Virus record (IMG/VR): IMGVR_UViG_3300009158_000031
Coordinates: 1 to 64,000 of that record
DNA length: 64,000 nt
Reading direction: 5' to 3' (one strand)
Positions within the stretch are counted from its first letter, which is position 1. The number at the start of each line of letters is the position of its first letter. Positions 780 through 19,915 of the stretch are shown here, piece by piece. Both the position numbers and the translations under genes were made by a program. The notes below the pieces were generated by a model. The model did no database searches. It was not told the DNA's origin and saw only the letters and a program-made list of their open reading frames with translations.

Positions 780-837
780 AATGTTAATAACTTTTTGTGC
801 TAAAATTTTTTTATACCAACCTTTTTTATTATATTTG
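780..837 (+). promoter_or_regulatory. Bacteroidota-type sigma promoter (early/middle) with upstream TGTTAATAAC box
   Basis: TATATTTG at 830-837 fits the Bacteroidota -7 consensus TAnnTTTG. The same architecture recurs at about 3090 and 21474. Confidence 0.75.
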
Positions 838-862
838 TATATACAATTTAAAACATATACAT

Positions 863-1393
863 ATGACACAATTACAATGTACAAGGTTTTCTTTAATAAA
901 GAATACCAAGCCATTAGGCACCGAAGATTTGCTAACAGTTTTAAACGAAATTGCATCTGACAAATACAAAGTTCAAATCGAAGAAATTCGTAAAGCCGAA
1001 AATCCTTCAAAATCTCCTTTGAAAGATAAACTTCCATTATTTACACCGACCGGTATCTTCTCTCATCGTTCAATGGCCGGACTAGAATCTTACAATGGTA
1101 TTATATGCCTCGATATTGATGGTGTATCAAATCCACAAGAACTAAAAGAAAAAGCAAAAACATTACATTGGGTATATGCTGCTTTTATTACTCCTTCTGG
1201 CCAAGGACTTAAAGTTCTAGTAAAAACTAATGCAACTTCCGAAACCTACAAACAAACCGAAATTCTGGTTGCCGAAGCATTTTTTAATATAACCGGTTCA
1301 TCTCGAGATAATCACTGCAAAGATATTGCAAGAATTCAATTCGTTTCACACGATCCAGATATTTACATTAACGAACATTCTGTAACATTTTAA
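863..1393 (+). CDS. BT4734/BF3469-like (VirE N-terminal, primase-like) protein
   Basis: Motifs LKDKLPLFTPTGIF, YNGIICLDID, FITPSGQGLK and DNHCKDIARIQFVSHDP. Start moved to ATG 863, downstream of the promoter. Confidence 0.8.
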   Translation: MTQLQCTRFSLIKNTKPLGTEDLLTVLNEIASDKYKVQIEEIRKAENPSKSPLKDKLPLFTPTGIFSHRSMAGLESYNGIICLDIDGVSNPQELKEKAKTLHWVYAAFITPSGQGLKVLVKTNATSETYKQTEILVAEAFFNITGSSRDNHCKDIARIQFVSHDPDIYINEHSVTF

Positions 1394-1436: not shown

Positions 1437-1730
1437 ATGTATACCGAATCTACATTAGATCCTGCTGCTAAATCAGTATTGGAACACTTAAAATCAAATT
1501 GCGAAGAAGAAATTAAGATGATTGAAGATTGTATTAAGCTACGTCTTCATATGTCAAATGGTCTTACATCGAAAGAAAGAGAACAAAATCTTTTTGATCC
1601 ATTTCAACTACAACTAGTTATTCATGATACTTATGATTTAGAAATGCATGCATATGACGTTGGTGCATGGGAAACGCAAAAACAAACATTAGATACAATT
1701 AATCAATTATTAGAATATGAAGTCGAATAA
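1437..1730 (+). CDS. Hypothetical protein
   Basis: ORF in the operon with an A-rich upstream region. Confidence 0.7.
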   Translation: MYTESTLDPAAKSVLEHLKSNCEEEIKMIEDCIKLRLHMSNGLTSKEREQNLFDPFQLQLVIHDTYDLEMHAYDVGAWETQKQTLDTINQLLEYEVE

Positions 1731-2208
1731 ATCAAGAATTATACTATGCGGTAAAGCTGCATCAGGAAAAGATCATCTTCGAAAAATCCTCGAAGGTCGC
1801 GGTTTTAAGTATGGTGTATCTTATACTACTCGTCCACCACGTCAAGGAGAAATTGATGGTAAAGATTATTTCTTTTTAGAAGAATCTGAATTTAACGATC
1901 TAATCGAACAAAATTTCTTCTATGAATATGTAACCTTTAATGGTTGGTTCTATGGAACATCAAAAGATCAATGGTATAACACCGATGATATATTCATTAT
2001 GACTCCTTCAGGTATTCGCAAGCTACATGCAGCCGATAGAAAATCTTCGTTTATCATTTGTATTGATATTCCTAGAGAAACCAGAAAAGCTAGATTAACT
2101 GAAAGAAATGATACGGCAGATTCTATTGATCGTCGATTAGATGCAGATGATCGAGATTTTGAAGGATTTAACGATTTTGATATCGTAATCAACAATGAAA
2201 ATTTTTAA
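1717..2208 (+). CDS. gmk: Guanylate kinase
   Basis: P-loop GKAASGKD, plus SYTTRPPRQGEIDGKDYFF and FYGT. Confidence 0.9.
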   Translation: MKSNKSRIILCGKAASGKDHLRKILEGRGFKYGVSYTTRPPRQGEIDGKDYFFLEESEFNDLIEQNFFYEYVTFNGWFYGTSKDQWYNTDDIFIMTPSGIRKLHAADRKSSFIICIDIPRETRKARLTERNDTADSIDRRLDADDRDFEGFNDFDIVINNENF

Positions 2209-2212
2209 ATAT

Positions 2213-2644
2213 ATGGAAAAGAAATCAAAAAAACCAAGTTGGAACGAAATTATACATCGTCCACAATTACCAGAAGGATGGAGTGTTATCGAACAACAAA
2301 CATCTCTTAAATGTTCAACCACCAATTTTGTTAGATGGGGAAAAACTCATCATAATGGACAACCTGAAAGAATTTGGGTAGTATTAGTGGAACATAATCC
2401 TGAATATTACGCTGTACCTTTCGTTGTTCGAGGAGGATTACATGCTAAAGGTCCTTCAGGATTAAGTTACTTTCAAGACATTAAATCAGCAACAGAATGC
2501 TTGGTTATTATTATGGAAGCTACTGATCGTTGGATTGAAGAAATCAACTCAGAGAAATATATCAAAGCTTACAATGATAAAATTGAAGCTGCGATTAAAG
2601 CTGACGAAAAACGAAGAAAGGATTCATCCGAACTTTATGCATAA
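2213..2644 (+). CDS. Hypothetical protein
   Basis: ORF; the ATG just after the gmk stop is the preferred start. Confidence 0.7.
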   Translation: MEKKSKKPSWNEIIHRPQLPEGWSVIEQQTSLKCSTTNFVRWGKTHHNGQPERIWVVLVEHNPEYYAVPFVVRGGLHAKGPSGLSYFQDIKSATECLVIIMEATDRWIEEINSEKYIKAYNDKIEAAIKADEKRRKDSSELYA

Positions 2645-3086
2645 TTATTTAGTAGTATCTCAGAGTGGAGATTTTGGCTTAAACAAGCAATTAGCTCTAA
2701 AGGTAATGAGTATATTGAAGATGGAACATGGAAAAGATTCTGTCTATATAAATGCATCTGGCTTTACTAAAGCGGATTATGCATTTAATAAGATTATATT
2801 CATTATTCCTGAATGGAATGGAACATATCCATATCTATTCAAACAAATCATCGATAATTCAGAATGGCCTTCTCTTTTAGATAAAAAGAAAGTTCTGCTT
2901 ATTGGTACATCAAATGGTAAATTTGGTAATGTTATGGGAGTCAATCACTTTGAGTATACTCTTAATTATGTCGGTTCTTCCGTCTTTACGAAGAAGGTTT
3001 ATGTACCTAAATTAACAGAAAATATAGAAAACGAAGAGTATATAGGTTATCTAAAAGATGTACTATTAGAGTTCCATTTAGCATAA
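2637..3086 (+). CDS. NAD(P)H-dependent FMN reductase (flavodoxin-like)
   Basis: IIPEWNGTYPYLFKQIID and KKVLLIGTSNGKFG resemble the PEYNxSxPxxLKxxxD family motif. Confidence 0.75.
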   Translation: MHNYLVVSQSGDFGLNKQLALKVMSILKMEHGKDSVYINASGFTKADYAFNKIIFIIPEWNGTYPYLFKQIIDNSEWPSLLDKKKVLLIGTSNGKFGNVMGVNHFEYTLNYVGSSVFTKKVYVPKLTENIENEEYIGYLKDVLLEFHLA

Positions 3087-5473: not shown

Positions 5474-6184
5474 ATGACAAAATACTTTAAGTATTCTGAC
5501 TTTGAGCAAGCGTTTCTTTGCATTAATGGCGAAATAATTACCAATCCTGAATATCGTTCAACTTCTCGATTAGGTGATATGTTAGAAATTCAAAGTCTTA
5601 CATATGAAGTTGCAGATCCAACAACATATAAATTCACAAACGAAAACATCGGCAGATTAAATTACGATTATGCAGATACATTTTATCAATGGATGATATC
5701 TGGATCTACTGATAATGAAGCACTTCTTAAAGATTATCCTAATGTTGCAAGATTCATGGAAAAACCTAAATCTCCTGATCTTCCAGCAAATTTCAATACA
5801 TTCTATGGTCCTCGTATTCTAGAACAACTACCTCACGTTATCAAAGAACTTAAAGATCATCCTGATACTCGTCGAGCAGTAATTTCTATCCTTGATAAAA
5901 GTGATGTACTTCTTCTCGATAAACCAAATGAAACTCTTGAATTTCCTTGTTGTGATTCTGCAACATTCTCTATTCGTGAAGGTAAGCTGAATATTCACTT
6001 ACATATGCGTTCACAAAATATAGGTCAAGTACTTAAGCTGGATATGTATCTATGGGGTAGATTTCAAACGCAAATTGCTGAAGAATTAGGTTTACCTGTT
6101 GGTAGATTCGTTTCAACTGTAGTTTCTGCTCATGTATTCGAAAAAGATATTGCTTACTTAAATGACTTAATTATTAATTCGTAA
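5474..6184 (+). CDS. Thymidylate-synthase-fold dCMP-modifying enzyme (gp42-like, atypical)
   Basis: Motifs YGPRI, DTRRAV, catalytic PC, MRS and SAH. Asp occupies the cytosine-specificity position (RSQNIGQVLKLD). Confidence 0.85.
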   Translation: MTKYFKYSDFEQAFLCINGEIITNPEYRSTSRLGDMLEIQSLTYEVADPTTYKFTNENIGRLNYDYADTFYQWMISGSTDNEALLKDYPNVARFMEKPKSPDLPANFNTFYGPRILEQLPHVIKELKDHPDTRRAVISILDKSDVLLLDKPNETLEFPCCDSATFSIREGKLNIHLHMRSQNIGQVLKLDMYLWGRFQTQIAEELGLPVGRFVSTVVSAHVFEKDIAYLNDLIINS

Positions 6185-6194
6185 ATCCAAACAA

Positions 6195-7511
6195 ATGAAA
6201 GATAAAAAACTCCAAGTATTCTATGCAGTTCAAGTATCAAACTTTACATTAGTAAATGGCAAACCTAAATGGTTATTGCGAAATGATGCATGCACTAACA
6301 TTGCAATCGGAATCATCTCTACGGTTTTAAAGAGATATCCTGATCAATTCAAATTTTTAATTAAACTTCCTTCTGCTTATGATACAGTAGATGTGGTTCA
6401 ATTAGAAGATCTATTTAAACCAGAATTTCATAAAGATATCGAATTTCTTATTGATGATATCCCTCATTCTCCAGTAACTAGTCGCTATCATTTCGATATG
6501 CAACGATATCTCGTTCATCCTGAATATGCAAAAGCTTTCAGCGAAGTAGATCTTATGATTAATGATGAAAATACATTAACGAAGAATTGGCGAGTACTTT
6601 TCAATGAAATGAAATTAACCATCCCAATCATTTCTACGAATTATTTCCTCGATTCACCTATCGCAAATAAAGTTCCAGAAAAACTTCGTTATTATGAACG
6701 TCAAATGGAATCTTTTATTACATCGGATATTGCTGCATTTCAATGCGAAGCTGGCAGAGTCGAAGCTATGGAAGCTTATGATGTTTTATTTAAGACTCGT
6801 GAGATTCTAGCTCCTCAATCCGTATGGGGTGTTGGTGCACATTATGCCGAAATCGAAGAATATCATACAGATAAAAAATTCGAGATACCTACAATTTACT
6901 TTGGCAATCGTATTTCGGATACTGCAAATCGTTATACTAATTATGATACATTCGCCGAAGCAATTGGTATTCTATCGACTATCACCGATAAACCATTTCG
7001 AGCAGTAATGCTTAATCCAACTCGTAAAGTTACTGCCGATCAATTGAATTTAATTGCAGATCTATCTAAACATCAAGTTGAAGTAATGTCTAACGATGAA
7101 AAATTCACTCGTCAAGATTATCTAACATTCATCAACAAATCTCATATTGCTTGTAACCTATTCGTCACCGAAGTTCATGGTGGTGTTACTCATTGTGAAG
7201 CAATGATGGCTAAGAATATTTTGGTAATGCCTAAAGTAAATAATTACTGGCACAAAATGAAAAAGGCTGGTCATGAAGATTATCCTCTATTCACTGCACT
7301 CGATTCAACGAATTCTCATAAACCAGATGCTCGTGATGTAGCAGAAAAATTGAAGATTGCTCTTAATTATATAGATACTCCTATAGAAAATCAATTAAGA
7401 GAATTATGTCATAATGTCGGTTATAAATACGAATCTTACGAATCTGCTTGTGATCGTATCGTAAATGATATACGTTCGCTTGTTCTTCCTATCTTGAATA
7501 ATAAAAACTAA
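6195..7511 (+). CDS. GT-B glycosyltransferase (GT4/alpha-glucosyltransferase-like)
   Basis: C-terminal donor-binding motif EVHGGVTHCEAMMAKNILVMP and YFGNR. Lies in the modification operon. Confidence 0.7.
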   Translation: MKDKKLQVFYAVQVSNFTLVNGKPKWLLRNDACTNIAIGIISTVLKRYPDQFKFLIKLPSAYDTVDVVQLEDLFKPEFHKDIEFLIDDIPHSPVTSRYHFDMQRYLVHPEYAKAFSEVDLMINDENTLTKNWRVLFNEMKLTIPIISTNYFLDSPIANKVPEKLRYYERQMESFITSDIAAFQCEAGRVEAMEAYDVLFKTREILAPQSVWGVGAHYAEIEEYHTDKKFEIPTIYFGNRISDTANRYTNYDTFAEAIGILSTITDKPFRAVMLNPTRKVTADQLNLIADLSKHQVEVMSNDEKFTRQDYLTFINKSHIACNLFVTEVHGGVTHCEAMMAKNILVMPKVNNYWHKMKKAGHEDYPLFTALDSTNSHKPDARDVAEKLKIALNYIDTPIENQLRELCHNVGYKYESYESACDRIVNDIRSLVLPILNNKN

Positions 7512-7520
7512 TTAACAATT

Positions 7521-7555
7521 TGACGAGGAGTAATCATTTGGTTACTCCTTTGTCA
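7521..7555 (+). other. Intergenic stem-loop (weak terminator or processing site)
   Basis: TGACGAGGAGTAATC-ATTT-GGTTACTCCTTTGTCA inverted repeat. Confidence 0.55.
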
Positions 7556-7571
7556 TATAATAATTAAACAT

Positions 7572-8126
7572 ATGGCAAACTTAATTCTACTTGAAGGCTT
7601 ATCCAGAACAGGCAAATCAACTATTTCAAAATCGATTGCTGATGAATTTGGATTTCGTAATTTCTCCATTAAGACTAAGATGCCGGATTATGTACAAAAT
7701 TTACCTGATTTTTATCATGGTATGCACGTTTTAGCAAATGAATTATTCAGATCTTTTCCCCATGAAACTTTCATCTTAGATAGATCTTTTTTATCTGAGA
7801 TGGTTTATTCTCAATTTTTTAACAGACATTCATATATAAATAACGATCAAGTCATTTGCGATTTACTTCTAGATAACAAGTTTATACTTGTACTTCTAGA
7901 TAACAATCATCAAAATTATTTAGATCGTGGACCAAAAGATAAAATCACTTATTCTGAACAAGAATTTATTAAACAGAAAGATCTTTTCCAATGGCACTTC
8001 CATAATTTCCGTGACAAATACGATCCACAATCATGGCGAGATAGATTTTTACACATTGATACATCAATCACAACTCTAGAAGATACAACAAAACAAATTA
8101 AAACAAAGATAAAACAAGTATTATGA
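7572..8126 (+). CDS. dNMP (thymidylate-kinase-like) kinase
   Basis: P-loop LEGLSRTGKST and the ILDRSFLSE motif. Confidence 0.85.
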   Translation: MANLILLEGLSRTGKSTISKSIADEFGFRNFSIKTKMPDYVQNLPDFYHGMHVLANELFRSFPHETFILDRSFLSEMVYSQFFNRHSYINNDQVICDLLLDNKFILVLLDNNHQNYLDRGPKDKITYSEQEFIKQKDLFQWHFHNFRDKYDPQSWRDRFLHIDTSITTLEDTTKQIKTKIKQVL

Positions 8127-9280
8127 AAAATAAAGCAGCGATAGTAACCGGTAGTTCAGGTCTTATTGGTTCGCAAACGGTTAAATCTCTTATTGAAAAG
8201 GGATATTATGTGATTGGCATTGATAATGATATGCGATCATATTTTTTCGGATCCGATGCATCTACTAAAGAATCTGAACAAAAAATGTTATCTGATTATG
8301 GTAGAGAAAAATTCAATCCTGTAAGTATCGATATTCGAGATTATGAAGGATTGGAATTCGTATTCAAATATCTAACAGAAAATATAACTACTCTTCTTGG
8401 AGAACCAGTTGAATTTGATTTTGATTTAGTTGTTCATACCGCAGCACAACCTTCACATGATTGGGCAGCTAAAGAACCTCTAACTGATTTTTCTGTTAAT
8501 GCAATCGGTACCATGAATTTACTAGAATTAACTCGACTATATGCACCAAAAGCAACCTTCATCTTTACTTCGACTAACAAAGTTTATGGTGATACTCCTA
8601 ATCGTTTGAATTTAGTTGAATTGGAAACTCGATATGAAGCAGTATCTAATCTTTCGAAAAATCTTATCGAGGTAGATGAATTTATGTCAATCGACCATAC
8701 TAAACATTCCATCTTCGGTGCATCTAAAGTTGCTGCTGATATTATGGTTCAAGAATATGGAAGATATTTTGGAATGAATACCGTAGTATTTCGAGGTGGT
8801 TGTTTAACTGGACCTAATCATGCAGGTGCTGAACTTCATGGATTCTTATCTTACTTAATCAAATGTATTGTTAATAACAAACCTTATACCATCTTTGGTT
8901 ATAAAGGAAAACAAGTTCGAGATAACATTCATTCATCAGATCTAGTAAATATGTTCTGGCATTATCATCAAAATCCTATTCCAGGTGCAGTGTATAATGC
9001 AGGTGGTGGTCGAGAAAACAGCACATCTATTCTTGAAGCTATCGCAACCACAAATACTATTCTTAAAGAAGAAAATCCTGAACATAAAGATTGGAAGAAT
9101 TTCAAAATCTCCAATGATGCTCGAATCGGTGACCATCAATGGTATATCTCAGATCTAACTAAATTTAAGACTGATTATCCACAATGGCCTGGAATTACAA
9201 TTTCATTAGATGAAACTATTCGTCAAATAATCAAATTTGAACAAACAAAAACAGCTGAAGTACTAAATGAAGCGAATTAA
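8123..9280 (+). CDS. NAD-dependent NDP-sugar epimerase (CDP-paratose 2-epimerase-like SDR)
   Basis: TGSSGLIG, AAQPSHDWAA, STNKVYGD, HSIFGASKVAAD and GKQVRDNIH. Confidence 0.9.
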   Translation: MKNKAAIVTGSSGLIGSQTVKSLIEKGYYVIGIDNDMRSYFFGSDASTKESEQKMLSDYGREKFNPVSIDIRDYEGLEFVFKYLTENITTLLGEPVEFDFDLVVHTAAQPSHDWAAKEPLTDFSVNAIGTMNLLELTRLYAPKATFIFTSTNKVYGDTPNRLNLVELETRYEAVSNLSKNLIEVDEFMSIDHTKHSIFGASKVAADIMVQEYGRYFGMNTVVFRGGCLTGPNHAGAELHGFLSYLIKCIVNNKPYTIFGYKGKQVRDNIHSSDLVNMFWHYHQNPIPGAVYNAGGGRENSTSILEAIATTNTILKEENPEHKDWKNFKISNDARIGDHQWYISDLTKFKTDYPQWPGITISLDETIRQIIKFEQTKTAEVLNEAN

Positions 9281-10535
9281 CATTGGCGTAATCATTTATA
9301 CGAAGATTGGTACTAAAACTTCTATTCTTCTAGGAGAATTCGAGTTTTGGAACGATTTTCAACGAATGAACCCTGATTGTGACTTCTATTTTATATCAAT
9401 ATCGAAGAACACAACAAAGAGTATTATTGACCATCAACATCTACTTAACTTTCCAGTTAGGATGATACAGGTGTATGATGTGAAGGATCTTTCCAAGCTA
9501 AATAACCTTTCTGGGATATTTTCATATATGACTAGAAATACCTTCTTTGGAGGTCAAATGAATCCATCATGTGTTCATAATTACGTGATATCTGCTTACT
9601 GTAGCAATACGCTAAACCTTCCTTTATTTATTAGAACTCCTGATTCAGAATATCCCTATTTGGATTATAAGAAAATGGCGGATGTTCGAATTGAGAAAGC
9701 TACACCAAGTACACCTAAATTCATTAGAGAAAATAAACGTTTTCTAGATGTTATGACTGCAGATATCAAATATGAAAATGTTTATTTTGTAGCCAATGGA
9801 TCTCGTCATATGTGTGATTGGGTACAAGATATTGTATACCATGATATTCCAGATGTTATGAGAATAATGGAACCTAAAGAAATTTCTAGAAGAACTCTTT
9901 ATGTTTCGGATGATGTTCTATTCAATCTTCATATTAATAGAGAGCGTTATGCAAATCTAAATGTTGAAGTAAAGAATAATAAGCTTTTGTTTATTGGATT
10001 CCTTTCCGGATCAGTTGCAAAAAATCGTTTAGTTGCTTTAACTAAAATGTTGAAGGAAAAAACCGAAGAAATTCCTATGGATATTATTGGACCTGGAGCA
10101 GATTTGTTGATAGAAGATATTATTCGTGAGGATGTTACTCTTGAAAACCGTTCAGTTTTTGGTGATGAATTTTTCAAGCTACTTAATACATATTTAGCTT
10201 ATGTGTTTATTGGTAAAGGTAATGCGATAAACAAATATGTAAACAAAACAATTTACGATTGTATATCTGCAAAATGTCCTATTGTCGTTTACTCTGCATG
10301 TGATACTAATCAAGCTATTTTTAAGAGCAACGAATATTATTTCTCTAACGAATCCGAACTAAAAACAACCATGGATAAATTAAGAGATCCTGCAATTCGT
10401 AATCGTTGGATCGATGAACAGAAAGCTGATATTGAAGAAAAATTAACACATAACGAAGAGATATTTAAGTTCTCTCAATTCTGTAAGCCTAAAGATCAAG
10501 TTGTTAATAACATTAGAATCGAGCCATTATTCTAA
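9267..10535 (+). CDS. T4 beta-glucosyltransferase-like DNA glycosyltransferase
   Basis: TFFGG parallels T4 BGT NFFGG, and TPDSEYP parallels FTDIRLP (catalytic Asp). The C-terminal KTIYDCISAK...YYFSNESEL parallels BGT RVWETMAS...FYVNNRAEL. Confidence 0.75.
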   Translation: MKRINIGVIIYTKIGTKTSILLGEFEFWNDFQRMNPDCDFYFISISKNTTKSIIDHQHLLNFPVRMIQVYDVKDLSKLNNLSGIFSYMTRNTFFGGQMNPSCVHNYVISAYCSNTLNLPLFIRTPDSEYPYLDYKKMADVRIEKATPSTPKFIRENKRFLDVMTADIKYENVYFVANGSRHMCDWVQDIVYHDIPDVMRIMEPKEISRRTLYVSDDVLFNLHINRERYANLNVEVKNNKLLFIGFLSGSVAKNRLVALTKMLKEKTEEIPMDIIGPGADLLIEDIIREDVTLENRSVFGDEFFKLLNTYLAYVFIGKGNAINKYVNKTIYDCISAKCPIVVYSACDTNQAIFKSNEYYFSNESELKTTMDKLRDPAIRNRWIDEQKADIEEKLTHNEEIFKFSQFCKPKDQVVNNIRIEPLF

Positions 10536-10551
10536 TTCATAAAATAATAAA

Positions 10552-11166
10552 ATGAATATATTTGTACTAGATCAAGATCCGAGAATTGCTGCACAAATGC
10601 ATTGTGACAAACATGTTCCAAAAATGATTATCGAACATGCGCAAATGATGACGGCTGCATATTATTCTACTTTAGGTATTAGCCGAAAGAAAGAAATTCC
10701 GGATCAACAATTTGTAGTAAATGAAATGTTTCGCGGTTGGCCTAGAAGAAATGCCGATGGAAGTGAATGGCATTATGCAATATCACATGTCAATCATCCA
10801 TGCACAATTTGGACACGAGCTTCAATCGAGAATTTTAATTGGTTACTAGATTGTACTGAAGAACTTTGTTACGAATTCACTCGTCGTTGGGGTGGTAAAC
10901 ATTCAATCGAAAAGATCGTAGATTGGATGCGTCAAAATCCTCCTAAATTGCCTTCTTCTAAACAAACTCCTTTCGCAATGGCAATGCCGGATTGTTTTAG
11001 AACTACTAATCCGATTGAATCTTATCGTAGATACTATGGCATGAAAACAACTTACATGAAAGTAGCTTGGATTCGAGGAACTCAACCGGATTGGTGGTCA
11101 GATCAATTTGCCAAAGATTGCGTTAATCAATATTATATTGCAAACCCAGCCTTGTTGGTTGGATAA
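10552..11166 (+). CDS. Pyrimidine-dimer DNA glycosylase / endonuclease V-like
   Basis: MNIFVLD...HCDKHVPKMIIEHAQM, HVNHPCTIW, FAMAMPD and ESYRRYY. Confidence 0.85.
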   Translation: MNIFVLDQDPRIAAQMHCDKHVPKMIIEHAQMMTAAYYSTLGISRKKEIPDQQFVVNEMFRGWPRRNADGSEWHYAISHVNHPCTIWTRASIENFNWLLDCTEELCYEFTRRWGGKHSIEKIVDWMRQNPPKLPSSKQTPFAMAMPDCFRTTNPIESYRRYYGMKTTYMKVAWIRGTQPDWWSDQFAKDCVNQYYIANPALLVG

Positions 11167-14276: not shown

Positions 14277-14882
14277 ATGCCTAAAACATTCATGAAATAT
14301 CAGGATTTCGTTGATCCTAAAAGATCAGGGAAATATCAGAGCATCACGATATTTGATGTTGATGATACGTTAGTCGTAACTAAATCTCAAATTAAAGTAA
14401 TTGATACTAATACCAATAAGTCTTTTACTTTAACTCCGGCAGAATTTAATGAATTTGAAAAGAAATCTCATCATGAAATGGATTATTCAGATTTCAAAAA
14501 CCTAGATATTCTAAAGGCCGGTAAAATTATAGAAAATATCTTCTCTATCCTTAAGAAAGAAATGCGTAAAGGCGGAAGAGTTGGTATTATCACTGCCAGA
14601 GACGATCGAAATCTAATCTATCAATTTCTACTTCATCATGGAGTAGTGGTTAATCCAAATTACATATTTGCAGTTAATGATCCTGAACTTGAATTTACTG
14701 GAAGCGTAGCTGAAAAGAAAAAACAAGCCTTTATAGAATTAATAAAGATTGGATTTAGAGACTTTACATTTTATGACGATGATGCTGAAAATATACGAAT
14801 TGCTAAAGAGTTAGATGGTGAAATTGAAGGTATACATATTAAGACTAAACATGTAAAGGTAAGATGGAACAACAAAGACTGA
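14277..14882 (+). CDS. HAD-superfamily phosphatase
   Basis: Motif I FDVDDTL, motif II ITAR, a Lys, and motif IV FYDDD. Confidence 0.8.
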   Translation: MPKTFMKYQDFVDPKRSGKYQSITIFDVDDTLVVTKSQIKVIDTNTNKSFTLTPAEFNEFEKKSHHEMDYSDFKNLDILKAGKIIENIFSILKKEMRKGGRVGIITARDDRNLIYQFLLHHGVVVNPNYIFAVNDPELEFTGSVAEKKKQAFIELIKIGFRDFTFYDDDAENIRIAKELDGEIEGIHIKTKHVKVRWNNKD

Positions 14883-15343
14883 TACACCGAAACGATCAAA
14901 AGATTGATACATTCGCAGAAATCGTTGAATCGATTGCTACTTTATCTGCCGCATCAACTAAGAAAGTTGCATGTATGGCTATTCACAAAAATTTTATTAA
15001 GATTGCATCCTTTGGATATAATGGATCTTATGCTGGTGCTCCCATCAACGAAACAACTGGAACCGAAGAAGATTCGCTAGAACCTGGTAATTCAGGATTT
15101 ATTCATGCAGAAGTTAACATGATTTCGAAATTTCGAGAACATGATCCTGAAAATTATATCGTTTTTCTTACGCTTTCTCCTTGCAAAATGTGCACTAAGA
15201 TTCTAGTTAATTCTGGATTTAAAATGGTGTATTGGTTAGAAGATTATCGAGAACAAGAACATCTCACTATTTTCGATGAATGTGGAATTCATTATGGTAA
15301 TATAAACAAACTCAAAAAAGATTATTTCAAATTAGTAAAATGA
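14864..15343 (+). CDS. dCMP deaminase
   Basis: GYNG, HAE and SPCKMC zinc motifs. Confidence 0.9.
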   Translation: MEQQRLIHRNDQKIDTFAEIVESIATLSAASTKKVACMAIHKNFIKIASFGYNGSYAGAPINETTGTEEDSLEPGNSGFIHAEVNMISKFREHDPENYIVFLTLSPCKMCTKILVNSGFKMVYWLEDYREQEHLTIFDECGIHYGNINKLKKDYFKLVK

Positions 15344-15762
15344 AATATACTCTAACAATTCTAAAACCAGATGCAATATCTCGTGGAATAGAATCTAAAA
15401 TCACCAAACACATAACCGATGCCGGTTTTCAAATTGCCGCTCGTAAAAGAATTCACCTAACAAATGAAGAGGCCTACGATTTCTATGAGGTACACAAAGA
15501 CAAACCTTTCTTTAGATCTCTTGTAGATTACATGACTTCTGGAGCTTGTGTATTTATGGTTCTTCGTAATGAGAATTCTCCTAATGCAATAGATCATTTT
15601 CGTAAGTTAATAGGATCTACCGATCCGGCTGAAGCAGAGGAAGGAACCATTCGTAAAATGTATGCAGAATCCCTAGAAAGAAACTCTATCCATGGATCTG
15701 ATTCACCGGAATCAGTTATTAAGGAGTGTGATCTTATGTTTCCGGAATTATCGTTCAATTAA
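15340..15762 (+). CDS. ndk: Nucleoside diphosphate kinase
   Basis: LKPDA, FYEVHKDKPFF, GSTDP, GTIR and NSIHGSDS. Confidence 0.95.
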   Translation: MKYTLTILKPDAISRGIESKITKHITDAGFQIAARKRIHLTNEEAYDFYEVHKDKPFFRSLVDYMTSGACVFMVLRNENSPNAIDHFRKLIGSTDPAEAEEGTIRKMYAESLERNSIHGSDSPESVIKECDLMFPELSFN

Positions 15763-16137: not shown

Positions 16138-17003
16138 TGAAATATATCATAACATCAAAAAATGTTCGTTCTGGTACTAGCGTAGATGATGCCGCTGATC
16201 CATTTCAAGTTACCGAAATAGCAACTGAATTAATAATAACTCGGTTGTATTTGATACATCTGTTAAATACCTCGATTATAGACATTGAAGATACTATCGT
16301 ATGTATAGGAGATAGACGATGTTTATATACAAACATTTTCAAAAATGTTATGTCATTCGAAGATTATACTAATTCTATTGACATCGATAAAAAAGATGTT
16401 ATAGATCTATTAGAATCCAGCAAATTTAATTCGCTTGCCTCTGGATTAGTAGACTCGAGAGAATTACCATATCTACCTTTTTATCGAAATTGGGATAGAG
16501 ATAAAAATCATATTTTAAACGTTGAAGATAGTGATCTATCAGATTATGATTTATCTTCACCGTTCTTGTGTTTAGTTATTCGAAAACGAAGTGCATGGTC
16601 AGAAAAAAACATGTCAAATGATTTTTGGAATGATGTTATATCTGAATTAGAAAATCGAGGAATTAAAATATTCGTATTTGGAAAAGAAACTGAGGGTTTT
16701 TGTACAGAAAAAACGAAGCAAATTAAAACATTTCGAGATTGGTGTTCTATTGTTAAACATGTTAATTGTAAACATGTTGCTAGTACAATGACTGGTGGAG
16801 TATATCCTCTTATCGTATTTGGAAATTCAAATTGTAAAATGACAATAATCGACAATACCAATCTTAAGAAAGCTCATGGACACGATCCATCGTTCTATAA
16901 CTCATGTATAAATTTCTCTAATATCGAAATGAAATTTATCGAAAATATACCAACAATAAAAGAATTTGCCGATGAATTATGTAGTAATTACATCAATAAA
17001 TAA
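16137..17003 (+). CDS. Putative GT-B (GT9-like) glycosyltransferase
   Basis: The C-terminal half RKRSAWSEKN...FWNDVI...IFVFGK...MTGG has the GT9-like layout. Confidence 0.45.
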   Translation: MKYIITSKNVRSGTSVDDAADPFQVTEIATELIITRLYLIHLLNTSIIDIEDTIVCIGDRRCLYTNIFKNVMSFEDYTNSIDIDKKDVIDLLESSKFNSLASGLVDSRELPYLPFYRNWDRDKNHILNVEDSDLSDYDLSSPFLCLVIRKRSAWSEKNMSNDFWNDVISELENRGIKIFVFGKETEGFCTEKTKQIKTFRDWCSIVKHVNCKHVASTMTGGVYPLIVFGNSNCKMTIIDNTNLKKAHGHDPSFYNSCINFSNIEMKFIENIPTIKEFADELCSNYINK

Positions 17004-17955
17004 TTTAACCGAATCTATTCGAAAATTCTCGGCAATACCGGATTGGCATGTTATTGTTGTAGGCGATTTAAAGAGTAAAAGATATTCACATCCAAATGTG
17101 ACTTATCTAGGAGTAGAAGAACAAACGAAACTTAATTTATTTAGTGCATTAACAACTCCATACAATCATTATTCAAGAAAGAATTTAGGTTATTTGTACG
17201 CTATAAGTAAAGGAGCTAATCTAATTTTTGATACTGACGATGATACTATTCCGTATGATGATTGGTATCCAAGAGATTTTGTATGCGATAAATTGGTAGA
17301 TGGATCAACCGTTATCAATCCCTATACGCTATTCACTAAAGAAAAATGTTGGCCTAGAGGATTAGACCTATCTCATATAAATAAGCCAAATACTTACACG
17401 ATATCTAATAAAGGCTCAAAGATAGGTGTTTGGCAAGGAGTAATTGATGATGATTCAGATTTTGATGCAATATATCGATTAACCATAAATAAGCACATAA
17501 AATTTAATAAAGAAGATGATGTCGCAATAGGAACACGATGTTACACCCCTTTCAATACACAAAGTACTTTATGGAATACTAAATTTCATTCTTTGCTTTA
17601 TGTTCCCATCTCAGTAGATTTCAGATTTACGGATATTCTAAAAGGTTATATAGCTCAAAGAATTATGTGGGATTATGGATATCAGGTGGGTTTTCATTAT
17701 CCTAACACATATCAAGTTAGAAATGAGCACGACTTCTATAAAGATTTTCTAGACGAGATTTCCATGTACCGATCAATTCCTTCATTGATGAATACTCTAG
17801 AAAGTATAAAACTCAAAAATGAGTCTATTGAAAATGATCTATTTTCGGTTTATTCTGCTTTATTAGATATTGGCATCGTGAAAGAGGAAGAGATGATAAA
17901 CCTACAACATTGGATAGATGATATCTCTAAGTTATCTAAAAAGGATTTAAGGTAA
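16972..17955 (+). CDS. STELLO/DUF288 (GT75-related) glycosyltransferase
   Basis: VITSIN, VIVVGDLKS, YNHYSRKNLGYLYAI, IFDTDDD, WPRG, PFNTQST and FRFTDILKGY. Confidence 0.8.
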   Translation: MNYVVITSINNLTESIRKFSAIPDWHVIVVGDLKSKRYSHPNVTYLGVEEQTKLNLFSALTTPYNHYSRKNLGYLYAISKGANLIFDTDDDTIPYDDWYPRDFVCDKLVDGSTVINPYTLFTKEKCWPRGLDLSHINKPNTYTISNKGSKIGVWQGVIDDDSDFDAIYRLTINKHIKFNKEDDVAIGTRCYTPFNTQSTLWNTKFHSLLYVPISVDFRFTDILKGYIAQRIMWDYGYQVGFHYPNTYQVRNEHDFYKDFLDEISMYRSIPSLMNTLESIKLKNESIENDLFSVYSALLDIGIVKEEEMINLQHWIDDISKLSKKDLR

Positions 17956-18652: not shown

Positions 18653-19915
18653 ATGGCTACTGGACCATACACCAATTCGTTAAACTTTCGTTTAAACCGA
18701 ACAAAACCTCTAAATTATACAGATTTAGATAATAACTTTAGATATCCAAATCAATGGGGACTCGATCGATCATATCTGTCAGGTATGATGGTTGTTTCGT
18801 ATGATTTTGGTTATACTGCATCAGATTCAATATCTATGTATATTGCTTCTAGCGATCATACGAGTACTATGCTTAATGCTCCAGGATTAACTGGTGCTCA
18901 ATGGACTGCAATTGCAGTTCCTAGTGCTGGATATGTTGGTCCAACCGGACCTCAAGGTGGAATTGGTGCTCAAGGTGCTGGATCTCAAGGATCTCAAGGT
19001 CCTCAAGGTTATCAAGGTGTTACCGGTTTTCAAGGAGTTCAAGGATCTCAAGGAGCTACTGGTATTCAAGGACATACTGGATATCAAGGGGTTCAAGGTA
19101 CTAAAGGAGATCAAGGTTTTAAAGGAGATCAAGGATTCCAAGGAGCTCAAGGTTATACTGGTAATAAAGGAGATCAAGGTTTTCAAGGTATTCAAGGAAC
19201 TGTAGGTAATCAAGGATTCCAAGGAGCTCAAGGAGAACAAGGAGATCAAGGTAACTCTATTACTGGATCTCAAGGAGATCAAGGATTTCAGGGAGATCAA
19301 GGATTTCAGGGAGATCAAGGTACTAAAGGAGATCAAGGTATTCAAGGTATTACTGGGCCAGGAGTTGGGTCTCAAGGACCTACTGGTTTCCAAGGTATTC
19401 AAGGAGCTAAAGGAGATCAAGGATTTCAAGGTATTCAAGGATCTAAAGGAGATCAAGGATTTACTGGATTTCAGGGTAATCAAGGACCTACCGGTTTCCA
19501 AGGTAATCGAGGTAATCAAGGATATCAAGGAGATCAAGGTTATCAGGGATATCAAGGTTATCAGGGATATCAAGGAGATCAAGGATTTCAAGGATTCGAT
19601 ACAGCATATGCTGCTATAAATAATCAAGTTTCTAGTTACACATTAGTGTTAGCCGATGCTGGTAAATTAGTGGAAATAGATAATGCCGCATCTTCAATTC
19701 TTACGGTTCCTTTGAATGCATCGGTTGCTTTTCCTGTAGGTACTCAAATTATTATTGCTAGACTTGGTACTGGTGAGGTGAGCGTTGTTGGTACTGGTGG
19801 TGTAACGGTTGTTAGTGCAAATTCATTTACATTCTTAAATAATCGATACTCATCTGCATCTCTCATAAAAAGAGGTACCAATGCATGGTATCTATTTGGA
19901 GATCTTAAACCTTAA
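18653..19915 (+). CDS. Collagen-like tail/head fibre protein
   Basis: N-terminal PLNYTDLDNNF fibre-attachment motif, a long G-X-Q collagen tract, and a C-terminal YTLVLADAGK domain typical of phage fibres. Confidence 0.85.
   Translation: MATGPYTNSLNFRLNRTKPLNYTDLDNNFRYPNQWGLDRSYLSGMMVVSYDFGYTASDSISMYIASSDHTSTMLNAPGLTGAQWTAIAVPSAGYVGPTGPQGGIGAQGAGSQGSQGPQGYQGVTGFQGVQGSQGATGIQGHTGYQGVQGTKGDQGFKGDQGFQGAQGYTGNKGDQGFQGIQGTVGNQGFQGAQGEQGDQGNSITGSQGDQGFQGDQGFQGDQGTKGDQGIQGITGPGVGSQGPTGFQGIQGAKGDQGFQGIQGSKGDQGFTGFQGNQGPTGFQGNRGNQGYQGDQGYQGYQGYQGYQGDQGFQGFDTAYAAINNQVSSYTLVLADAGKLVEIDNAASSILTVPLNASVAFPVGTQIIIARLGTGEVSVVGTGGVTVVSANSFTFLNNRYSSASLIKRGTNAWYLFGDLKP
18929..19600 (+). repeat. Collagen Gly-X-Y coding repeats (GFQ/GDQ/GYQ)
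   Basis: 9-nt periodic caagg repeats. Confidence 0.9.

What the first reader, a model, noticed from the sequence alone, without database searches (positions are those of the whole stretch)
5474..10535. Five-gene DNA hypermodification operon predicting an unusual glycosylated cytosine
Seen: a contiguous co-oriented set of TS-fold enzyme, GT4-like transferase, dNMP kinase, NDP-sugar epimerase and T4 beta-glucosyltransferase homologue, with NDK and dCMP deaminase nearby. Known: T4 makes 5hm-dCMP with gp42, phosphorylates it with gp1, then glucosylates DNA with AGT/BGT using host UDP-glucose. Inference: this phage replaces C before replication and then adds one or two sugars. A dedicated sugar epimerase between the two GTs suggests the sugar is not plain glucose (a rare deoxy or epimeric sugar, or a disaccharide). 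This would be a candidate new anti-restriction/anti-CRISPR base in a Bacteroidota phage.
Basis: partly seen in the sequence, partly recalled or inferred. Interest (0 to 1): 0.9.

Follow-up and report, generated by a model that had tools for sequence, protein, structure and literature searches.

The report
Phage genes for sugar-coated 5-hydroxycytosine

Summary
Five co-oriented, tightly packed ORFs at 5474-10535 encode a thymidylate-synthase-fold enzyme, a GT4-like GT-B glycosyltransferase, a thymidylate-kinase-like kinase, an extended-SDR "epimerase", and a homologue of T4 beta-glucosyltransferase. The two glycosyltransferases are recognisable only by predicted structure and profile comparison. 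dCMP deaminase and NDK lie 4-5 kb downstream.

The interpretation needs one central correction. The TS-fold enzyme is not a gp42-type dCMP hydroxymethylase. It is 53% identical to RB69 gp48 and carries the full Glu143/Cys146/Asn169/Asp177 signature of the flavin-dependent 5-hydroxy-dCMP synthases (Lee et al., NAR 2026). The order synthase, GT4-like enzyme, kinase matches RB69, DLP3 and RL38J1. The predicted base is therefore an O-glycosylated 5-hydroxycytosine.

Three things are new:
- A BGT-like transferase sits in such a cluster.
- The tyvelose-epimerase-like SDR has Phe in place of its catalytic Tyr.
- Relatives swap the sugar cassette (GDP-mannose dehydratase, aminotransferase fragment/acetyltransferase, methyltransferase, GT2) around a constant core.

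The sugar cannot be predicted. Verdict: a new variant of a known kind, of moderate to good interest.

The parts
5474..6184 (+). Predicted 5-hydroxy-dCMP (5hodCMP) synthase, a thymidylate-synthase-fold, flavin-dependent dCMP 5-hydroxylase
   Evidence: It is 52.8% identical to RB69 gp48 and 24% to T4 gp42. It matches PDB 9iqu/9iqc at E 2.5e-76. The signature is Glu156 (ThyA L143), Cys159 (C146), Asn182 (D169) and Asp190 (N177). Of the 150 best representative clusters, 67 carry this full signature and 3 more carry it as far as they align, including 32 of the 34 top-ranked hits that cover the site.
6195..7511 (+). GT-B (GT4-like) glycosyltransferase, proposed first DNA 5hoC O-glycosyltransferase
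   Evidence: The model has pLDDT 90.4. Foldseek PDB hits are 7mi0, GlgM, MshA 3c4q, BshA and SPS 6kih (E about 1e-10). MshA and 6kih are also the templates the paper reports for RB69 gp46:47 and DLP3 gp79. It lies between synthase and kinase, as in RB69, DLP3 and RL38J1. It lies within 2 kb of an Asn169 TS homologue in all 10 related loci that carry a TS homologue. It has an invariant E326...E335 motif.
7521..7555 (+). Stable RNA stem-loop in the only sizeable intergenic gap of the block
   Evidence: Folding gives dG -20.7 kcal/mol, z -5.8, with 0 of 200 shuffles reaching it. There is no U-tract, and the hairpin cannot be conserved in L005, where the gap is 23 nt.
7572..8126 (+). Thymidylate-kinase-like P-loop nucleotide kinase of the RB69 gp45 type
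   Evidence: It hits phrog_761 at E 1.6e-16, the same family and the same profile range as RB69 gp45. BLASTP against RB69 gp45 gives 27% identity over 85 aa, E 2e-4.
8123..9280 (+). Extended SDR related to CDP-tyvelose 2-epimerase, with the catalytic Tyr replaced by Phe198; presumed NDP-sugar-modifying enzyme
   Evidence: It matches 9rl0 and 1orr at E about 1e-31. The TNK segment is kept, but the YxxxK Tyr is Phe (HSIFGASK). Phe is invariant in phage relatives and in 80 of 80 bacterial homologues. It is the most conserved protein of the block, at 65-82% identity wherever it lies in the block (53% in L095).
9267..10535 (+). Homologue of T4 DNA beta-glucosyltransferase (GT-B), proposed second or alternative DNA glycosyltransferase
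   Evidence: The model has pLDDT 92.2. The top PDB hit is T4 BGT 1qkj (E 1.3e-10). hhalign against a BGT family profile gives 95.1%, E 3.1e-8, aligning ORF5 237-393 to BGT 181-337; BGT R195, G188 and E272 correspond to invariant R254, G244 and D331. Its start overlaps the SDR stop by 14 nt.
2637..3086 (+). Flavodoxin-like NADPH:FMN reductase homologue, a candidate supplier of reduced flavin to the synthase (inference)
   Evidence: Pfam FMN_red E 1.4e-5, just above the cutoff. It is conserved upstream of the block in 9 of 11 related loci. The start at 2637 is inferred from the homologues.
1717..2208 (+). Guanylate kinase (nucleotide-pool gene)
   Evidence: PF00625 E 5e-22. It is conserved in relatives.
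14864..15343 (+). dCMP deaminase
   Evidence: PF00383 E 6e-14. It is conserved in relatives.
15340..15762 (+). Nucleoside diphosphate kinase, for the last phosphorylation step to 5hodCTP
   Evidence: PF00334 E 4e-46.
10552..11166 (+). Conserved 204-aa protein directly after the cassette, role unknown
   Evidence: phrog_624 'DNA binding protein' E 3e-49. There is a weak, sub-threshold Pyr_excise hit (E 0.007). It is present after the cassette in 6 of the 11 loci compared. No solved relative was found.

Best explanation
The block is a 5-hydroxycytosine DNA hypermodification module of the RB69/DLP3/RL38J1 kind, with a different sugar part.

Proposed steps:
1. The TS-fold enzyme hydroxylates dCMP at C5, using a flavin and O2, to give 5-hydroxy-dCMP. 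This is inferred from 53% identity and the full active-site signature of enzymes with proven activity.
2. The thymidylate-kinase-like kinase and the phage NDK raise it to the triphosphate. This is inferred; the kinase's substrate is untested.
3. The phage polymerase incorporates it in place of dCTP.
4. After replication, the GT4-like enzyme transfers a first sugar from an NDP-sugar to the 5-OH. This is inferred from fold, from synteny and from its constant pairing with Asn169 synthases.
5. The BGT-like enzyme adds a second sugar or an alternative linkage. This is inferred from homology to a DNA glucosyltransferase.
6. The SDR, translationally coupled to the BGT-like gene, alters a host NDP-sugar into that enzyme's donor. 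This is the weakest step.
7. The conserved FMN-reductase-like protein upstream may supply reduced flavin. This is speculative.

The product would shield the genome from restriction and CRISPR nucleases.
For: Synthase:
- It is 52.8% identical to RB69 gp48 and to Klebsiella phage EI gp040, against 24% to T4 gp42 and 28% to E. coli ThyA.
- PDB 9iqu/9iqc matches at E 2.5e-76.
- Alignment A3 shows Asn at ThyA-169, Asp at 177, Glu at 143 and Cys146, whereas T4 gp42 keeps Asp169.
- The paper shows that every Asn169 homologue tested makes 5hodC, and it names Asn169 as diagnostic.
- In a search of 1.84 billion representatives, 32 of the 34 top-ranked hits that cover the site carry E-C-R-N-D, and gp42-type D-C-R-D-D hits appear only below them.

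Synteny: the order synthase, GT, kinase equals RB69 gp48/46:47/45, DLP3 gp80/79/78 and RL38J1 gp216/215/214.

Kinase: same PHROG as RB69 gp45.

ORF2:
- It has a GT4-like fold with the MshA and 6kih templates the paper reports for RB69 and DLP3 GT1.
- Its family lies next to a TS homologue carrying RSQN or RSNN in all 10 related loci that have one, even where the TS is only 31-36% identical.

ORF5: the top structural hit is T4 BGT, and profile homology covers the donor domain.

Conservation: the five-gene order is conserved in L005, L006, L007 and L008; L100 has the same five genes with one extra ORF after the GT4-like gene.

Neighbours: NDK, dCMP deaminase and guanylate kinase lie nearby. An FMN_red-like ORF is conserved upstream in 9 of 11 loci.
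Against: - There are no chemical data, and the phage is uncultivated.
- No dCTPase was found in the 64-kb window among the ORFs I scanned, so complete exclusion of C is not shown.
- No sugar nucleotidyltransferase was found among those ORFs either, so the donor must come from the host pool.
- In RB69 the kinase shown to phosphorylate 5hodCMP was the gp1 type, not the gp45 type found here.
- ORF2 has no detectable sequence similarity to the Marfavirus GT1 (hhalign probability 0.1%). Its best viral structural neighbours are Arthrobacter phage glycosyltransferases of unknown target.
- Only the C-terminal domain of ORF5 aligns to BGT by sequence. BGT Arg191 and Arg269 are not kept, and the Asp100 equivalent could not be assigned.
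- The SDR lacks the canonical catalytic Tyr.
- The hydroxylase needs O2, and the habitat is unknown.
Confidence: 0.7

Rival explanations
1. T4-type pathway. The TS homologue makes 5-hydroxymethyl-dCMP from methylene-tetrahydrofolate, a dNMP kinase phosphorylates it, and the transferases glucosylate hmC in DNA.
For: A BGT homologue is present. Asp177 and an acidic residue at position 143 are shared with gp42-type enzymes. NDK and dCMP deaminase are nearby.
Against: The protein has Asn, not Asp, at position 169. It is 24% identical to gp42 against 53% to proven 5hodCMP synthases. gp42-type signatures appear only among more distant hits. The kinase is not gp1-like. No alpha-glucosyltransferase or gp56-type dCTPase was found among the scanned ORFs.
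Confidence: 0.06
2. Only the synthase and kinase concern DNA. The SDR and one or both glycosyltransferases belong to a glycan cassette that decorates virion proteins or the host surface, so the DNA carries bare or singly glycosylated 5hoC.
For: In relatives the same slot holds typical glycan-pathway genes: GDP-mannose 4,6-dehydratase, GT2, an aminotransferase fragment, a hexapeptide acetyltransferase and a methyltransferase. The SDR's bacterial and megaphage homologues sit in polysaccharide-type clusters. The best viral structural neighbours of ORF2 are Arthrobacter phage glycosyltransferases of unknown target. A further STELLO-like GT lies at 16966-17955.
Against: The cassette is always inserted inside the nucleotide-modification block, between kinase and p204. 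ORF2 always lies close to an Asn169 synthase. ORF5's closest solved relative is a DNA glucosyltransferase. Published 5hoC phages build mono- to tri-glycosides with two or three GTs and carry their own sugar-pathway genes in the same cluster.
Confidence: 0.15
3. The pathway is as in the best explanation, but the sugar is an ordinary host hexose such as glucose from UDP-glucose. The Phe198 SDR is not a donor-forming epimerase; it could be a non-redox partner, a regulator, or an enzyme for a different step.
For: The catalytic Tyr of the SDR triad is Phe in the whole clade. In bacteria and in phages L094 and L096 this SDR is paired with a canonical Tyr-containing tyvelose-epimerase-like paralogue, which the window lacks. 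Relatives L097 and L098 have the core without any SDR.
Against: The SDR is the most conserved protein of the block and keeps the NAD-binding glycine motif and the TNK sugar-positioning segment. The BGT-like gene occurs only where the SDR is present (4 of 4 locus types) and overlaps it. From my own knowledge, other extended SDRs such as the CapE/FnlA group work with the Tyr replaced.
Confidence: 0.25

Closest known systems
Arabinosyl-5-hydroxycytosine systems of Straboviridae: RB69 gp45-gp55 and gp3, Acinetobacter phage DLP3 gp76-83, HY126 Afh genes (Lee et al. NAR 2026, PMC13326640; Mahler et al. 2025)
   Same: The synthase is the same family, with 53% identity and the Asn169 signature. The core order synthase, GT4-like GT, phrog_761 kinase is the same. 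The logic of pre-replicative base replacement followed by glycosylation on DNA is the same.
   Different: The window has no arabinose-5-phosphate isomerase, no kinase/uridylyltransferase, no HAD phosphatase and no U32-like protein among the scanned ORFs. Instead it has a Phe198 tyvelose-epimerase-like SDR and a BGT homologue, and the paper states that RB69 and DLP3 lack T4 alpha/beta-GT homologues. ORF2 shows no sequence similarity to the Marfavirus GT1. The host lineage differs, and the genome is a jumbo one of about 254 kb.
Hexosyl-5-hydroxycytosine of Rhizobium phage RL38J1 (Pootjesviridae)
   Same: A 5hodCMP synthase, an adjacent GT and a kinase are present. Several GT-B transferases build oligo-hexosides, and an NDP-sugar-modifying enzyme is encoded by the phage.
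   Different: RL38J1 uses a UDP-galactopyranose mutase rather than an SDR. Its synthase is more distant: Rhizobium phage homologues are about 34% identical. No BGT-like enzyme is reported for it.
T4 glucosyl-5-hydroxymethylcytosine pathway (gp42, gp1, gp56, alpha-GT, beta-GT)
   Same: Both have a TS-fold enzyme acting on dCMP, a nucleotide kinase, post-replicative DNA glycosylation and a beta-GT homologue.
   Different: The chemistry of the first step differs: flavin/O2 hydroxylation against folate hydroxymethylation. The window protein has Asn169 where T4 gp42 has Asp169. The kinase family differs. No alpha-GT or gp56 was found, and an SDR is added.
CDP-tyvelose 2-epimerase (TyvE; PDB 1orr, 9rl0)
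   Same: Both are extended SDRs. The window SDR matches at E about 1e-31 over residues 98-309, and keeps the TNK segment and the NAD-binding motif.
   Different: The catalytic Tyr164 equivalent is Phe198. The VAM segment and the Gly197-Trp207 loop are not conserved. The SDR belongs to a separate clade widespread in bacteria, with no characterised member that I could find.

Membership tests
[quoted passage not shown] | Thymidylate-synthase fold with the catalytic Cys (ThyA C146) | tested here: met
   PF00303 and phrog_160 match. Cys159 aligns with C146.
[quoted passage not shown] | Asn at ThyA position 169 (D169N), the diagnostic residue given by Lee et al. | tested here: met
   The motif RSQN starts at residue 179, so Asn182 aligns with D169. 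T4 gp42 has RSND.
[quoted passage not shown] | Cytosine-specifying Asp at position 177 and an acidic residue at position 143 | tested here: met
   Asp190 and Glu156 are present.
[quoted passage not shown] | Close sequence relationship to a member with proven activity | tested here: met
   52.8% identity over 231 aa to RB69 gp48, E 2e-89 pairwise. The activity of gp48 is shown in PMC13326640.
[quoted passage not shown] | Binds FMN and forms 5-hydroxy-dCMP from dCMP and O2 | not testable with these tools
   This needs an enzyme assay or in vivo nucleoside LC-MS.
T4-type dCMP hydroxymethylase (gp42) | Asp retained at ThyA position 169 and close similarity to gp42 | tested here: not met
   The protein has Asn182 and is 24% identical to T4 gp42 over 182 aa.
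T4 gp1-type dNMP kinase | Sequence similarity to T4 gp1 (PDB 1dek/1del) | tested here: not met
   The PDB sequence search returns only a marginal thymidylate kinase hit (E 0.1) and no 1dek. The family is phrog_761, as for RB69 gp45.
GT63 (T4 DNA beta-glucosyltransferase family) | GT-B fold with BGT as closest solved structure | tested here: met
   1qkj is rank 1 (E 1.3e-10, TM 0.58 on the query and 0.68 on the target), and further BGT entries (1nzd, 1j39, 1c3j, 1bgt, 1bgu) are among the 50 hits listed.
GT63 (T4 DNA beta-glucosyltransferase family) | Sequence-profile homology to BGT | tested here: inconclusive
   hhalign gives 95.1%, E 3.1e-8, but only for the C-terminal donor domain. There is no PHROG or Pfam hit.
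GT63 (T4 DNA beta-glucosyltransferase family) | Conserved UDP-binding and catalytic residues. E22, D100, R191, R195 and R269 are invariant in my BGT alignment; E272 is taken from my own knowledge of BGT. | tested here: inconclusive
   R195 corresponds to invariant R254, G188 to G244 and E272 to invariant D331. R191 and R269 are not kept, although invariant K327 lies next to the R269 position. D100 and E22 lie in the unaligned N-domain.
GT4 retaining glycosyltransferases | GT-B fold closest to GT4 members and an EX7E-type acidic motif in the C-domain | tested here: inconclusive
   The fold matches MshA, BshA, GlgM and sucrose-phosphate synthase. The invariant pair E326...E335 is spaced by eight, not seven, residues. 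No Pfam Glycos_transf_1 hit was found.
CDP-tyvelose 2-epimerase / NDP-sugar epimerases of the extended SDR class | NAD-binding Gly motif and the Thr-Asn-Lys sugar-positioning segment | tested here: met
   The motifs GSSGLIGS near the N-terminus and STNKVYG (T151, N152, K153) are present. The role of TNK is described in PMC13098431.
CDP-tyvelose 2-epimerase / NDP-sugar epimerases of the extended SDR class | Catalytic Tyr of the YxxxK motif | tested here: not met
   Phe198 stands in HSIFGASK, aligned without gaps to HSPYGCSK of 9rl0 and 1orr. Phe is found in all phage homologues and in 80 of 80 bacterial homologues.

The most novel reading that the evidence does not exclude
This jumbo-phage lineage makes a 5-O-glycosyl-cytosine not yet described. 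The first sugar would be placed by the GT4-like enzyme. A second, rare sugar would be made by a new class of tyvelose-epimerase-like SDR that works without the canonical Tyr, and would be installed by a BGT descendant retargeted from hmC to a glycosylated 5hoC. Lineage members would exchange the sugar cassette (6-deoxyhexose, amino or acetamido sugar, methylated sugar) as an arms-race 'serotype' of DNA. The FMN-reductase-like protein would be a dedicated reductase partner, making the hydroxylase a two-component flavin monooxygenase.
Probability: 0.3. Interest if true: 0.75.

Novelty: new variant of a known kind. Interest (0 to 1): 0.55.

Why it matters
Glycosylated 5-hydroxycytosine was recognised only in 2025-2026, and chemical structures are known only for arabinosides (Straboviridae) and galactose/glucose oligosides (RL38J1).

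This locus extends the system to an uncultivated lineage of phages of roughly 200-300 kb that is well represented in metagenomes. The GT4-like family has 162 clusters at 90% identity, on contigs up to 294 kb.

It shows a natural combinatorial series: a fixed core of synthase, GT and kinase, with interchangeable sugar cassettes.

That gives concrete candidates for new DNA glycosyltransferases and donor specificities. These are useful for understanding evasion of restriction, CRISPR and type IV systems, and as tools for enzymatic DNA glyco-labelling.

It also flags an uncharacterised bacterial SDR clade with a non-canonical active site.

Tried and rejected
- DNA and protein searches of ORF2, ORF5 and the whole block against 50,697 phage records found nothing.
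- Sequence searches of ORF2 and ORF5 against Pfam, PHROGs, NCBIfam and PDB found nothing. Only structure prediction and profile comparison resolved them.
- hhalign of the ORF2 family against the Marfavirus GT1 and against the ORF5 family gave no relationship.
- Host assignment:
  - A genome scan with the ligase found nothing.
  - The Bacteroidota -7 promoter motif TANNTTTG is not enriched: 94 observed against 84 +/- 9 expected.
  - No tRNA genes were found.
  - Supportive but non-specific hints are the absence of Shine-Dalgarno motifs (6 of 52 genes, equal to background), a BT4734-like domain, GC of about 33%, and many Cytophagales, Chitinophagales and Flavobacteriales among the SDR's bacterial relatives.
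- The sigma-70 promoter and terminator scans of the block were at or below chance, so I do not claim a delimited operon. Nearly the whole window is co-oriented.
- The conserved 204-aa neighbour could not be assigned.
- The supplements of the NAR paper are not held, so I could not check whether one of its nine tested metaviromic synthases comes from this lineage.
- I considered a dUMP substrate (5-hydroxyuracil) and rejected it because of Asp at position 177.

Full report
**What is there**

The window is the first 64 kb of IMG/VR contig IMGVR_UViG_3300009158_000031 (254,393 bp). The locus fetched from that contig has the same coordinates as the window. GC is about 33%, and almost every ORF is on the + strand. 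The finding's coordinates match five ORFs exactly: 5474-6184, 6195-7511, 7572-8126, 8123-9280 and 9267-10535. They are separated by 10 nt, 60 nt, -4 nt and -14 nt.

**The five proteins**

- ORF1 is a thymidylate-synthase-fold protein (PF00303, phrog_160).
- ORF3 is a P-loop kinase of phrog_761. RB69 gp45 belongs to the same PHROG over the same profile range. It shows no similarity to T4 gp1.
- ORF4 is an extended SDR whose best solved relatives are the CDP-tyvelose 2-epimerases 9rl0 and 1orr (E about 1e-31).
- ORF2 and ORF5 are invisible to Pfam, PHROGs, NCBIfam, PDB sequences and the phage collection. Both have many metagenomic homologues: 162 and 53 clusters. With those alignments AlphaFold gives confident models, pLDDT 90.4 and 92.2.
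- ORF2 is a GT-B enzyme nearest to GT4 members: 7mi0, GlgM, MshA 3c4q, BshA and sucrose-phosphate synthase 6kih.
- ORF5's best PDB match is T4 DNA beta-glucosyltransferase, 1qkj (E 1.3e-10). A profile of the ORF5 family aligns with T4 BGT at 81% probability. Against a five-member BGT family profile it reaches 95.1%, E 3.1e-8, over the whole donor-binding domain. BGT R195, G188 and E272 correspond to invariant R254, G244 and D331. R191 and R269 are not kept.

The nearby dCMP deaminase and NDK are also correct.

**The key correction**

ORF1's nearest relatives in the phage collection are about 500 Straboviridae proteins at 49-54% identity. They are followed by Rhizobium phages at about 34%, and then by a drop to 30% or less. 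T4 gp42 is only 24% identical. The best PDB match, 9iqu/9iqc (E 2.5e-76), is nearly identical to RB69 gp48, as a comparison shows.

Lee et al. (NAR 2026, PMC13326640) showed the following:
- RB69 gp48 and DLP3 gp80 are 5-hydroxy-dCMP synthases.
- They carry a flavin and take the oxygen from O2.
- Asn at ThyA position 169 is diagnostic. All nine further Asn169 homologues they tested made 5hodC.

In my alignment with E. coli ThyA, T4 gp42, RB69 gp48 and Klebsiella phage EI, the window protein has Glu143, Cys146, Asn169 and Asp177. T4 gp42 keeps Asp169.

A full HMMER search of 1.84 billion representative proteins found 20 clusters at E <= 1e-30. Among the best 150 hits, 70 have the Asn169 pattern, including 32 of the 34 top-ranked hits that cover the site. 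Another 47 have the gp42 pattern D-C-R-D-D, and these rank lower. The predicted product is therefore 5-hydroxy-dCMP, not 5-hydroxymethyl-dCMP.

**Synteny**

RB69 (gp48, gp46:47, gp45), DLP3 (gp80, 79, 78) and RL38J1 (gp216, 215, 214) all place the first glycosyltransferase between the synthase and a thymidylate-kinase-like kinase. The window has the same triad.

Eleven related loci were compared.
- Ten have a TS homologue beside or within 2 kb of the ORF2-family gene. In every one the TS has RSQN or RSNN, that is Asn169. This holds even in L097 and L098, where the TS is only 31-36% identical to the window's.
- The eleventh, L095, is a short contig with no TS in the stretch fetched.

This constant pairing is the best evidence that ORF2 acts on 5hoC. 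ORF2 has no detectable sequence similarity to the Marfavirus counterpart, so the relationship is one of position and fold, not demonstrated orthology.

**A variable sugar cassette**

Around the constant core the accessory genes differ between relatives:
- SDR plus BGT-like: the window, L005/L006, L007/L008 and L100.
- SDR alone: L092/L093, a 294-kb contig.
- A second, canonical SDR, the Phe-type SDR, GDP-mannose 4,6-dehydratase, an unknown 373-aa protein and a GT2: L094 and L096.
- A DegT aminotransferase fragment and a hexapeptide acetyltransferase: L100.
- A methyltransferase and a GT2: L007.
- No SDR: L097.
- A U32-peptidase-like protein next to the synthase, as with RB69 gp50: L098.

In this sample the BGT-like gene occurs only where the SDR is present, and its start overlaps the SDR stop by 14 nt. 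This fits the 'glycodiverse' 5hoC derivatives anticipated by Lee et al.. The sugar added in this phage cannot be predicted from it.

**The SDR is odd**

It keeps the NAD-binding glycine motif and the Thr-Asn-Lys segment. In TaTyvE, Asn125 of that segment positions the sugar and is essential for activity (PMC13098431). However, the catalytic Tyr of YxxxK is Phe198: HSIFGASK against HSPYGCSK, with no gaps nearby.

Phe is invariant in the following:
- phage relatives;
- a 62%-identical copy inside an unrelated sugar cluster of the 635-kb uncultured phage LR745206;
- all 80 bacterial homologues fetched, at 53-60% identity. Many are Cytophagales, Chitinophagales or Flavobacteriales, but Patescibacteria, Planctomycetota, Verrucomicrobiota and others also occur.

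In bacteria its commonest neighbours are a canonical, Tyr-containing tyvelose-epimerase-like SDR (32 neighbour ORFs) and a small GT2 (30 neighbour ORFs). Phages L094 and L096 carry that canonical SDR too, together with a larger GT2.

It is the most conserved protein of the block, so it is under strong selection. I could not find a characterised member.

**Supporting cast**

A guanylate kinase (1717-2208), the block kinase and an NDK would cover nucleotide phosphorylation. The dCMP deaminase feeds dTMP synthesis, as in T4 (the role is from general knowledge).

A flavodoxin-like FMN-reductase homologue (about 2637-3086) is conserved upstream in 9 of 11 loci. Because the synthase family uses a loosely bound flavin and O2, I suggest it supplies reduced flavin. 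This is speculation.

No dCTPase and no sugar nucleotidyltransferase were found among the ORFs I scanned in the window. The remaining 190 kb of the genome were not examined.

**Host**

The host is not established. Absence of Shine-Dalgarno motifs (6 of 52 genes, equal to background) with 55% A leaders, a BT4734-like domain and low GC are compatible with Bacteroidota. The Bacteroidota -7 motif is not enriched, and a ligase-based genome scan found nothing.

**Verdict**

The feature is real and conserved. It is a member of the recently described 5-hydroxycytosine glycosylation systems rather than a T4-type hmC system. It differs from every published example in three ways: its sugar enzymes (a BGT homologue and a Phe-type SDR), its carrier (an uncultivated jumbo-phage lineage), and the cassette-like variation among relatives.

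I rate it a new variant of a known kind. My confidence in the mechanism as stated is 0.7, and about 0.85 for the 5hodCMP synthase step alone. Interest is 0.55.

Noticed in passing
window 8123-9280; bacterial loci L010-L089; L009:7998-9104: A large, uncharacterised clade of tyvelose-epimerase-like extended SDRs has Phe in place of the catalytic Tyr (HS[LIV]FG[AV]SK) in 80 of 80 bacterial homologues. The commonest neighbours are a canonical Tyr-containing paralogue and a small GT2.
   Followed up: partly
window 2637-3086 (ORF listed from TTG at 2535): A flavodoxin-like FMN-reductase homologue is conserved upstream of the block in 9 of 11 related loci. It may be the reductase partner of the flavin-dependent synthase.
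   Followed up: partly
window 7521-7555: A strong stem-loop (dG -20.7 kcal/mol, z -5.8) lies in the 60-nt gap between the GT4-like gene and the kinase. It has no U-tract, and the gap is only 23 nt in relative L005.
   Followed up: partly
P0296, P0297, P0299, P0301 (representative search): Several Asn169 synthase homologues of 427-463 aa carry a C-terminal extension. Three of the four (P0297, P0299, P0301) show an RH(G/A)xTxxN motif typical of histidine phosphatases, and P0296 has a variant of it. This suggests synthase-phosphatase fusions.
   Followed up: no
L098/L099 6126-7184: A U32-peptidase-like ORF lies directly after a distant Asn169 TS homologue. This echoes RB69 gp50, whose role is unknown.
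   Followed up: no
window 16966-17955: A third glycosyltransferase candidate (STELLO-like, Pfam E 6.5e-11) lies 6.4 kb downstream of the block. Its target is unknown.
   Followed up: no
window 18653-19915: A protein with collagen triple-helix repeats (Pfam E 1e-33) is encoded here. Relatives L007 and L008 encode an ORF of more than 1100 aa at the matching position, with only a faint collagen-repeat hit.
   Followed up: no
window 10552-11166: A 204-aa protein (phrog_624 'DNA binding protein', sub-threshold pyrimidine-dimer-glycosylase hit) follows the sugar cassette in 6 of the 11 loci compared. It may act on DNA.
   Followed up: partly
L103:301-1557 (LR756500, 462-kb uncultured phage): This 418-aa homologue of T4 beta-glucosyltransferase (26% identity) sits in a huge phage. 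Its length resembles ORF5, but it is not detectably closer to ORF5 by BLASTP.
   Followed up: partly
whole window: There are no tRNA genes. Shine-Dalgarno-like motifs occur at background frequency (6 of 52 genes), and leaders are 55% A. ORFs of 1242, 1361 and 2655 aa and a baseplate wedge homologue (35268-37043) lie in the second half.
   Followed up: partly
window 797-1393: A BT4734-like N-terminal domain (Pfam E 3e-24) is present. The family is named after a Bacteroides thetaiotaomicron protein. It is a weak host hint.
   Followed up: no
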